From positions 60,202,001 through 60,266,000 of the forward strand of contig NC_079172.1 of assembly GCF_947568905.1 (NCBI RefSeq): a DNA stretch of 64,000 nt, read 5' to 3'. Source of the stretch: Ostrea edulis. Its lineage: Eukaryota. The translations under genes were made by a program, and so were the position numbers. The notes beneath the pieces are model-generated. The model worked only from the letters and a program-made list of their open reading frames with translations. It was not told the DNA's origin and made no database searches. Shown here piece after piece: positions 34,814 through 35,430 of this stretch. The stretch's first letter is position 1, and each line of letters opens with the position of its first letter.

Positions 34814-35354
34814 ATTTAGAGATTTGTATTTCAGTGTTAGTGAATTGACATTTAGAGATTTGTATTTCAGTGTTAGTGAATTGACATTTAGAGATTTGTA
34901 TTTCAGTGTTAGTGAATTGACATTTAGAGATTTGTATTTCAATGTTAGTGAATTGACATTTAGAGATTTGTATTTCAGTGTTAGTGAATTGACATTTAGA
35001 GATTTGTATTTCAGTGTTAGTGAATTGACATTTAGAGATTTGTATTTCAGTGTTAGTGAATTGACATTTAGAGATTTGTATTTCAGTGTTAGTGAATTGA
35101 CATTTAGAGATTTGTATTTCAGTGTTAGTGAATTGACATTTAGAGATTTGTATTTCAGTGTTAGTGAATTGACATTTAGAGATTTGTATTTCAGTGTTAG
35201 TGAATTGACATTTAGAGATTTGTATTTCAATGTTAGTGAATTGACATTTAGAGATTTGTATTTCAGTGTTAGTGAATTGACATTTAGAGATTTGTATTTC
35301 AATGTTAGTGAATTGACATTTAGAGATTTGTATTTCAGTGTTAGTGAATTGACA
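34814..35354 (+). repeat. 36-bp x15 tandem array of the ERGIC1 intron-2/exon-3 junction
   Basis: Unit ATTTAGAGATTTGTATTTCAG|TGTTAGTGAATTGAC; 12 copies have AG and 3 have AA. Confidence 0.97.
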
Positions 35355-35430
35355 GTAGAGGATCCTGTGAAACACTCAGAGAAAATTCCTGTCTTCATCA
35401 ACCTCACTATACCCAAGTTAAACTGTAAAT
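35339..35430 (+). CDS. ERGIC1: ERGIC1 exon 3 (shortest form; 11 further intact in-frame acceptors lie upstream)
   Basis: tttcag|T...T|gtaagt, 92 nt. Encodes VSELTVEDPVKHSEKIPVFINLTIPKLNCK. With this acceptor the protein is 290 aa, the length recalled for human ERGIC1. Confidence 0.88.

What the first reader, a model, noticed from the sequence alone, without database searches (positions are those of the whole stretch)
34814..35430. Ladder of 12 in-frame alternative 3' splice acceptors in ERGIC1: a VNTR that could write variable-length (VSELTFRDLYFS)n inserts
Seen: the 36-bp unit is the last 21 nt of intron 2 plus the first 15 nt of exon 3. There are 15 copies, with candidate exon starts at 34835 + 36k up to 35339. 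The unit is a multiple of 3 and has no stop in the ERGIC1 frame (ORF 34824..35534). Exon 2 (GT|) could therefore join any intact AG and add 12 aa per unit, up to 168 aa, just after TM1 in the lumenal domain. Each internal copy has a TTGAC branch-point-like motif about 23 nt before the AG, supplied by the exon part of the previous unit. Three copies carry AG>AA, including the one immediately upstream of the shortest-form acceptor and the one at -108. A CA..TAGAG microhomology between intron and exon offers a slippage origin. Inference: local sequence cannot discriminate the copies, so choice depends on exon definition. The array could act as a copy-number-dependent isoform generator, and the AA copies may reflect selection against the nearest competitors.
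Basis: partly seen in the sequence, partly recalled or inferred. Interest (0 to 1): 0.85.

Follow-up and report, generated by a model that had tools for sequence, protein, structure and literature searches.

The report
Splice-acceptor minisatellite in oyster ERGIC1 intron
In the European flat oyster's ERGIC1 gene the border between intron 2 and exon 3 has been copied head-to-tail 15 times, but all available evidence shows the last, genuine splice site in use and the normal protein made, so this is one more example of a known, tolerated repeat type ("mirage" minisatellites) and not a shown isoform generator.

Summary
A 36-bp unit (21 nt of intron 2 plus 15 nt of exon 3) stands 15 times at 34813-35354. 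The unit is in frame and stop-free, and 12 copies carry AG. The only variable position is the acceptor G, changed to A in units 3, 11 and 13.

The window is Ostrea edulis assembly GCA_947568905.1. Joining exon 2 to the last acceptor (35339) gives exactly the 290-aa RefSeq protein XP_048744023.2, which carries no isoform label.

Five other oyster species have short introns (113-217 nt) with a single boundary copy, so the array is young and specific to this lineage.

The only usable transcript data are spliced contigs from two runs of a close relative. They join 33891 to 35339 and nothing else, with zero coverage on the array. I could not show whether that relative carries the array.

The window is about 20% minisatellite. 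A mirror-image array duplicates the exon 7 donor, and there the first donor is used.

The type is already described: "mirages" in amphioxus and the ABCA7 VNTR in humans. This scan has noted the same type many times on other pieces of this genome.

Verdict: a tolerated splice-junction minisatellite. The isoform ladder is unsupported, though not excluded in O. edulis itself.

The parts
32416..32435 (+). ERGIC1 exon 1, coding part (MQFDIR, first 2 nt of R)
   Evidence: The ATG and GT donor are read. The loose end of the X2 contig continues into this sequence. The annotated CDS of the O. edulis record starts here.
33757..33891 (+). ERGIC1 exon 2 (TM1), ending ..GAT GT before donor GTATGT
   Evidence: Pfam ERGIC_N, E 3.8e-11. 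The spliced-contig joint leaves at 33891. Sequence read.
33892..35338 (+). Intron 2, 1447 nt (113-217 nt in five other oyster species)
   Evidence: Joint 33891->35339 with GT..AG ends. Orthologue intron lengths.
33991..34581 (.). Very high-copy dispersed repeat inside intron 2, which accounts for part of the intron's growth
   Evidence: Contig depth is up to about 64,000 against a baseline near 32 in DNA run X3. No terminal inverted repeats were found.
34813..35354 (+). 36-bp x 15 minisatellite; each unit is the last 21 nt of intron 2 plus the first 15 nt of exon 3. Units k=0-13 are decoy copies and k=14 is the genuine boundary.
   Evidence: DNA contigs break exactly at 34842 (X6) and start exactly at 35325 (X3). 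Those are the 31-mer unitig break points expected at the two array edges, so at least 2 copies exist in reads of two studies (my inference).
34941..34942 (+). AG>AA in unit k=3 (dead decoy acceptor)
35229..35230 (+). AG>AA in unit k=11 (position -108)
35301..35302 (+). AG>AA in unit k=13 (position -36, the nearest decoy)
35339..35430 (+). ERGIC1 exon 3, starting after the genuine acceptor AG at 35337-35338
   Evidence: Joints 33891->35339 and 35430->35890 in X1 and X2. The product equals XP_048744023.2. All orthologues read ..HDV|VSELTVEDP...
35890..39096 (+). ERGIC1 exons 4-9: 35890-36014, 37098-37211, 37552-37606, 37765-37865, 38595-38717, 38989-39096 including the stop
   Evidence: Joints, set to GT..AG. 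Pfam COPIIcoated_ERV on exon 8.
37861..38356 (+). Mirror-image array: 20-bp x 24.6, each unit the last 5 nt of exon 7 plus GTAAGT... (decoy donors). The first donor, at 37865|37866, is the one used.
   Evidence: Joint 37865->38595. DNA runs X3 and X6 carry one extra 19-nt unit at 38309.

Best explanation
This is a young, lineage-specific intronic minisatellite of the 'mirage' type. A microhomology-mediated tandem duplication copied the intron 2/exon 3 border of Ostrea edulis ERGIC1, and slippage or unequal exchange expanded it to 15 near-identical units. The most downstream copy, the only one followed by the rest of exon 3, is the acceptor that makes the conserved 290-aa protein. The 14 upstream copies stay in the intron as decoys and are used little or not at all. 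The choice most likely follows exon definition: the acceptor nearest across the exon to the exon 3 donor and to the real exonic sequence is favoured.

Shown: the anatomy, the lineage specificity, and the canonical product in the annotation and in a relative's mRNA.

Inferred: the mechanism of origin, the reason the last copy wins, and the neutrality of the AA variants.
For: - Array anatomy.
- The window is O. edulis GCA_947568905.1. The splice product through 35339 is identical to RefSeq XP_048744023.2, 290 aa, with no isoform label.
- Spliced contigs of X1 and X2 show a single joint, 33891->35339. All depth in 34582-35369 is accounted for by exon 3 alone.
- No protein carrying the repeat peptide exists among 5.8 billion clusters.
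- C. virginica, C. angulata, M. gigas, S. cucullata (two haplotigs) and S. echinata have one boundary copy in introns of 113-217 nt.
- The window holds about 30 minisatellites covering about 20% of its bases, and the same gene has a second border array.
[quoted passage not shown] In the ABCA7 donor VNTR, canonical splicing and a transcript retaining one unit are both seen (PMC5954066). For sites of equal strength, exon definition favours those closest across the exon (PMC9225289).
Against: - The RNA-like runs are labelled as another organism. Their exons differ from the window by about 2% and one intron piece by 8%, so they may lack the array. No O. edulis RNA reads could be laid.
- Logan contigs drop rare variants.
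- Annotation pipelines handle junction reads in repeats poorly.
- Every decoy from k=1 on has the same branch-point-like motif, pyrimidine tract and AG as the genuine site. The proximity rule is only a statistical preference.
- In primates, 66% of border repeats also have transcripts that keep the repeat in the exon (PMC2812944).
- The one variable position of the array is the acceptor G, which hints at some cost of decoy use.
Confidence: 0.72

Rival explanations
1. Isoform ladder. Several upstream acceptors are used at appreciable levels, giving ERGIC1 proteins with 2 to 14 extra 12-aa units after TM1. The mix would depend on copy number.
For: There are eleven intact decoys with identical local signals and an in-frame, stop-free unit, so nonsense-mediated decay would not remove the products. 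Border repeats in primates often yield both forms (PMC2812944). UBC shows that splice sites in each repeat unit can give a stochastic ladder (PMC10809524).
Against: The RefSeq gene has a single 290-aa product. The available mRNA contigs show only the canonical joint, with no array words. No such protein is in public collections. In frame and open had a prior of about 1/3. The insert would sit at the start of a lumenal domain that is 96-97% conserved among oysters.
Confidence: 0.12
2. Decoy array as a splicing brake. The units bind U2AF and U2 or fold on each other, slowing or tuning removal of intron 2. Copy number would then affect ERGIC1 expression and not protein sequence. The AA variants would be selected to protect the genuine site.
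For: The last units fold better than shuffles (z -3.6), pairing unit with unit and pairing the final pyrimidine tract with the exon 3 donor. ABCA7 VNTR length affects splicing of neighbouring exons. The only variant position hits the AG.
Against: A shuffle control inflates z for any repeat. There are no expression data. The older donor array shows no enrichment of changes at splice-site positions: about 7 substitutions in 9 core positions against 11 in the 11 others. The type is common genome-wide, which argues for tolerance and not for gene-specific function (scan notes, unchecked).
Confidence: 0.1
3. Assembly artefact: the true allele has one or two copies.
For: The copy number could not be read from short-read contigs.
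Against: DNA contigs of two studies break exactly at the positions expected for a repeat of at least 2 copies. From my own knowledge, this is a long-read reference assembly whose reads span a 540-bp array with ease. The neighbouring array differs by only one unit between the data sets.
Confidence: 0.03

Closest known systems
'Mirage' minisatellites of amphioxus (Adh3; globin genes BflGb6 and BflGb9)
   Same: Both are tandem duplications that span an intron-exon boundary, at either the 5' or the 3' border. Units are 10-160 bp and many carry AG or GT. Regular splicing is kept, and length differs between haplotypes (PMC3087553).
   Different: This one is in a bivalve, with 15 nearly perfect copies and an in-frame 36-bp unit. 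Length polymorphism is not yet shown for this array.
Human ABCA7 intron-18 VNTR (25-bp unit that includes the exon 18 donor)
   Same: The array starts on a genuine splice site and abuts the exon. Canonical splicing is seen alongside a transcript that retains one unit (PMC5954066). It is the direct counterpart of the donor array at 37861-38356.
   Different: The ABCA7 array is on the donor side and out of frame, and its length effects on splicing and disease risk are documented. Nothing comparable is known here.
Internal tandem repeats at exon-intron boundaries in primate segmental-duplication genes (De Grassi and Ciccarelli 2009)
   Same: Border repeats there can be either spliced out or kept in the exon, changing protein length (PMC2812944).
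   Different: Both forms have transcript support in 66% of those cases. Here only the spliced-out form is seen.
UBC polyubiquitin dual-specific splice-site array
   Same: It is a tandem array with a splice site in every unit, giving a stochastic ladder of isoforms (PMC10809524).
   Different: UBC units carry AGGT sites that act as both donor and acceptor, and the units are whole functional monomers. This unit has acceptors only and encodes no domain.

Membership tests
ERGIC1 (ERGIC_N + COPIIcoated_ERV family) | Both Pfam domains present and a full-length orthologue | tested here: met
   ERGIC_N on exon 2 (E 3.8e-11) and COPIIcoated_ERV on exon 8 (E 1e-6). The 290-aa product is identical to O. 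edulis XP_048744023.2 and 280/290 identical to Crassostrea orthologues.
Splice-junction ('mirage') minisatellite | The tandem unit contains the end of an intron plus the start of the adjoining exon (or the reverse), and the array abuts the genuine boundary | tested here: met
   The unit is 21 nt of intron plus 15 nt of exon, and the last unit is the genuine boundary. The joint lands at 35339.
Splice-junction ('mirage') minisatellite | Regular splicing is maintained despite the decoy sites | tested here: inconclusive
   The canonical joint is the only one in two RNA-like runs, and the annotation has a single product. The runs are from a close relative, however, and are contigs, not reads.
Splice-junction ('mirage') minisatellite | Copy-number instability between haplotypes or individuals | tested here: inconclusive
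   Short-read contigs collapse this array. The neighbouring donor array does differ by one 19-nt unit in X3 and X6.
Splice-junction ('mirage') minisatellite | Recent, lineage-specific origin from a single-copy boundary | tested here: met
   Five other oyster species have a single copy. The units are 98-100% identical.
Alternative 3' splice-site ladder in use (tandem acceptors) | Two or more acceptors are seen joined to the same donor in transcripts | tested here: not met
   One joint only, 33891->35339, in X1 and X2. No insert-bearing protein was found. Caveat: this was not tested on O. edulis reads.
UBC-like dual-specific splice-site repeat | Each unit carries an AGGT site able to act as both 5' and 3' splice site | tested here: not met
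   The unit reads ..TTTCAG|TGTTAG.. and has no AGGT and no good donor.

The most novel reading that the evidence does not exclude
In O. edulis animals that carry the array, the spliceosome does use several of the 11 intact decoy acceptors. ERGIC1 would then be made as a ladder of proteins with 24 to 168 extra residues after TM1. The distribution would shift with array length and with the positions of the AA units, making this a heritable, copy-number-tuned protein-length polymorphism in a cargo-receptor gene.
Probability: 0.1. Interest if true: 0.55.

Novelty: new member of a known kind. Interest (0 to 1): 0.25.

Why it matters
It matters mainly as a clean natural experiment. Twelve acceptors share an identical 3' splice-site sequence, and all but the first share the same branch-point-like motif. 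Three naturally killed copies sit among them. In the same gene, about 20 near-consensus donors stand in a row. Counting junction reads in genotyped flat oysters would show directly how an invertebrate spliceosome chooses among equal sites, by exon definition or by intron-centred proximity. It would also show whether such arrays cost anything.

For annotation, it warns that border repeats in this repeat-rich genome can mislead gene models and read mappers. As a discovery it is modest. The type was named in amphioxus in 2002, is known in human genes, and recurs widely in this genome.

Tried and rejected
- **Protein search with the array ORF plus exon 3, then with a full-length orthologue, plus a cluster listing.** Only 290-aa canonical proteins came back. 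The negative is weak for O. edulis, because the collection holds its RefSeq protein but no transcript-derived ones.
- **Pfam on the repeat ORF.** The hits (PCI, a ubiquitin-like domain, YuiB, KTSC) have no stretch that passes on its own. They are repeat-driven noise and were rejected.
- **Scan of metagenome contigs for the exon 2-exon 3 junction word shared by the canonical and ladder forms.** No match of either kind, so it is uninformative.
- **Copy number from the DNA runs.** The 31-mer contigs collapse the array and the depth bins cannot be interpreted. Only the exact contig break points were usable.
- **Organism A as a proxy for O. edulis.** Its exons are about 2% diverged and one intron piece 8%, against 1-2% for an independent O. 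edulis DNA run. I treat it as a congener, so its clean splicing does not test this array.
- **RNA folding of the last four units.** z is -3.6, but shuffling destroys any repeat, so I give it little weight.
- **Inverted-repeat search on the high-copy intron insertions.** No terminal repeats were found, so the element type is left open.
- **Selection on decoys.** Tested on the older donor array, with no enrichment of changes at splice-site positions.

Full report
**Observation.** Tandem Repeats Finder reports 34813-35354, period 36, 15.1 copies, 98% matches and no indels. A pattern search finds 15 copies with at most one mismatch, against none in 100 shuffles, and nowhere else in the window. Cut in register with exon starts at 34835+36k, every unit is 21 nt of intron end plus 15 nt of exon 3 start. 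All units are identical except for one position, the G of the acceptor AG, which is A in units k=3, 11 and 13. The ERGIC1 frame reads (VSELTFRDLYFS)n with no stop, and the two other frames are closed. The A of the TTGAC motif, which is simply the conserved codons for E-L-T, lies 23 nt before each exon start. The two AGs in TTTAGAG lie 5-8 nt after it, which by general knowledge of 3' splice-site scanning is too close to a branch point to be used (sequence).

Three corrections apply. The 12 intact AGs include the genuine one. The open frame runs 34764-35531. Because the frame is already open for 70 nt upstream of the original acceptor, any unit length divisible by three would have been stop-free, so this property had a prior of about one in three.

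**The gene.** Exon-sized open segments on the + strand match ERGIC1. Pfam finds ERGIC_N on exon 2 and COPIIcoated_ERV on exon 8. With the joints seen in spliced contigs, set to GT..AG, the exons are:
- exon 1: 32416-32435
- exon 2: 33757-33891
- exon 3: 35339-35430
- exon 4: 35890-36014
- exon 5: 37098-37211
- exon 6: 37552-37606
- exon 7: 37765-37865
- exon 8: 38595-38717
- exon 9: 38989-39096

The product is 290 aa. It is identical at every residue to Ostrea edulis RefSeq protein XP_048744023.2, a hidden member of a 90% cluster. The locus fetched for that protein, GCA_947568905.1 chromosome OX387712.1, is base-for-base identical to the window. The window is therefore the flat-oyster reference assembly. 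Its annotation uses the last acceptor and names one product with no isoform label.

**Transcript evidence.** The run search returned no run on record as RNA. Two runs (X1, X2, 'organism A') held 7-8% of the words, which is the share expected from exons. Laid on 33400-39300, they carry contigs spliced across all eight introns with GT..AG ends, so they are RNA. One 2295-nt contig spans the whole mRNA. The only exon 2 joint is 33891->35339. Depth is zero from 34582 to 35172, and the depth in the next bin is exactly what the first 31 nt of exon 3 contribute.

This agrees with the inert-decoy reading but is weaker than it looks. Organism A differs from the window by about 2% in exons and 8% in one intron piece. 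An independent O. edulis DNA run (X6) differs by only 1-2% in introns. Organism A is therefore probably a congener whose array status I could not determine. Contigs also drop rare variants.

Searches of 5.8 billion protein clusters found no protein with the repeat peptide at any length from 111 to 507 aa. That collection holds no transcript-derived O. edulis ERGIC1 at all, so this too mainly restates the RefSeq model. A scan of metagenome contigs for the junction word found nothing of either form.

**DNA evidence.** Short-read contigs cannot give the copy number. However, the X6 contig from the left flank ends exactly at 34842 and the X3 contig into exon 3 starts exactly at 35325. Those are the positions where 31-mers stop or start containing a base outside the periodic stretch 34813-35354. 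A de Bruijn graph breaks there only if the boundary is present at least twice (my inference). The duplication is therefore in the reads of two studies.

**Origin and age.** The orthologous loci of C. virginica, C. angulata, M. gigas, S. cucullata (two haplotigs) and S. echinata have intron 2 of 113, 217, 216, 132 and about 151 nt, with a single boundary and no trace of the unit. Here the intron is 1447 nt. It is inflated by a dispersed repeat of very high copy number at 33991-34581 and by the 525 intronic bases of the array. With one variable site in 540 bases, the array is very young or is kept homogeneous.

**Context.** The window holds about 30 distinct minisatellites covering about a fifth of its bases. 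The same gene has a mirror-image array at 37861-38356. It has 24.6 copies of a 20-bp unit made of the last 5 nt of exon 7 plus GTAAGT.., at 89% identity (first noted in the scan). The mRNA contigs use the first donor, and both DNA runs carry one extra 19-nt unit at 38309, so that array is length-polymorphic.

I used the donor array as a control for the idea that selection kills decoys. Aligning its 25 units gives about 7 substitutions in the 9 splice-site core positions against 11 in the other 11. Only one decoy has lost GT and four carry the weakening +5 G>A. There is no sign of directed inactivation. In the acceptor array, the single variant position hitting AG has a chance probability of about 2/36 for one mutational origin. 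Its three occurrences (k=3, 11, 13) are most simply copies spread by unequal exchange. I rate this suggestive, not significant.

**Why the last copy would win.** From k=1 on, the decoys are identical to the genuine site from the branch-point-like motif to +16. Discrimination must therefore come from further context. [quoted passage not shown] Here that means the last acceptor and the first donor. For 3' sites, though, this only reduces an upstream preference (PMC9225289). Both flanking introns are long here, at 1447 and 459 nt. The genuine copy is also the only one followed by real exon sequence. Each decoy 'exon' would contain further pyrimidine tracts and branch-point-like motifs. A fold of the last four units pairs unit with unit (z -3.6), which I give little weight because shuffling destroys any repeat. 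All of this is inference, and low-level use of some rungs remains likely.

**Comparison with what is known.** Scan notes on other pieces of this genome pointed to the name 'mirage' (unchecked AI notes), and I checked it. [quoted passage not shown] They cite the original Adh3 case, with units of 10-72 bp, length instability, and RT-PCR showing that regular splicing is not disturbed although many units carry AG/GT (PMC3087553).

Three further precedents:
- The human ABCA7 intron-18 VNTR starts on the exon 18 donor. Canonical splicing and a transcript retaining one unit are both seen (PMC5954066).
- In primate duplicated genes, 27 border repeats modify introns, and 66% have transcripts of both forms (PMC2812944).
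- UBC shows a true stochastic ladder, but through AGGT sites that act as both donor and acceptor (PMC10809524). This unit lacks such sites.

The array meets the defining features of a mirage minisatellite that I could test: boundary-spanning unit, abutting the genuine site, recent origin. Maintained splicing and length instability remain inconclusive for this array.

**Verdict.** This is a real, tidy example of a known kind of repeat, in a genome where the scan has already noted the kind many times on other DNA. The in-frame ladder is an attractive possibility with no supporting evidence. I give 0.72 to a tolerated, largely silent decoy array and about 0.1 each to an appreciable isoform ladder and to a splicing-rate effect.

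Noticed in passing
window 37861-38356: A mirror-image border array: 24.6 copies of a 20-bp unit (the last 5 nt of exon 7 plus GTAAGTCTCACACAG), about 20 of them near-consensus donors. The mRNA contigs use the first donor. DNA runs X3 and X6 carry one extra 19-nt unit at 38309, so it is length-polymorphic. Variation is not concentrated on splice-site positions.
   Followed up: partly
window 33726: Both DNA runs (X3, X6) have 9 extra bases (CGTCTTCTT) relative to the assembly, 30 nt upstream of the exon 2 acceptor, in the pyrimidine-tract and branch-point zone of intron 1. This is either an indel polymorphism or an assembly haplotype difference.
   Followed up: no
window 33991-34581 and 37143-37536: Two intronic stretches show contig depths of thousands to about 220,000 against a baseline near 32 in DNA run X3. 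They belong to very abundant dispersed repeat families that inflate introns 2 and 5. No terminal inverted repeats were found in the first. A 14-nt palindrome lies at 37264-37292 in the second.
   Followed up: partly
window 31052-31534: A perfectly homogeneous 50-bp x 9.7 minisatellite (100% matches) lies about 0.9 kb upstream of the ERGIC1 start codon.
   Followed up: no
window 46965-47837: A 24-bp x 36 array sits inside a 327-codon open frame (46991-47971) encoding ..TSGLR(T/S)PD.. repeats. It is not known whether this is coding.
   Followed up: no
window 1-64000: About 30 distinct minisatellite arrays (periods 12-75 bp) cover about 20% of the window, for example 175-2540 (43 bp x 55), 14129-15040 and 18036-19144. 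This gives a high base rate for arrays touching exon borders.
   Followed up: partly
window 35325-35437: In an isolated RNA fold, the final pyrimidine tract and acceptor (AGAUUUGUAUUUCAG) pair with the exon 3 donor region (CUGUAAAUGUAAGUC). This is a predicted structure only.
   Followed up: no
window 33862-33891 (run X1): In X1 the mRNA graph breaks exactly at the exon 2 end. One contig ends at 33891 at depth 131, and another starts 30 nt before the joint at depth 236. This points to a second continuation after exon 2, such as unspliced RNA or exon skipping. It is not a ladder rung, which would branch 16 nt into exon 3.
   Followed up: no
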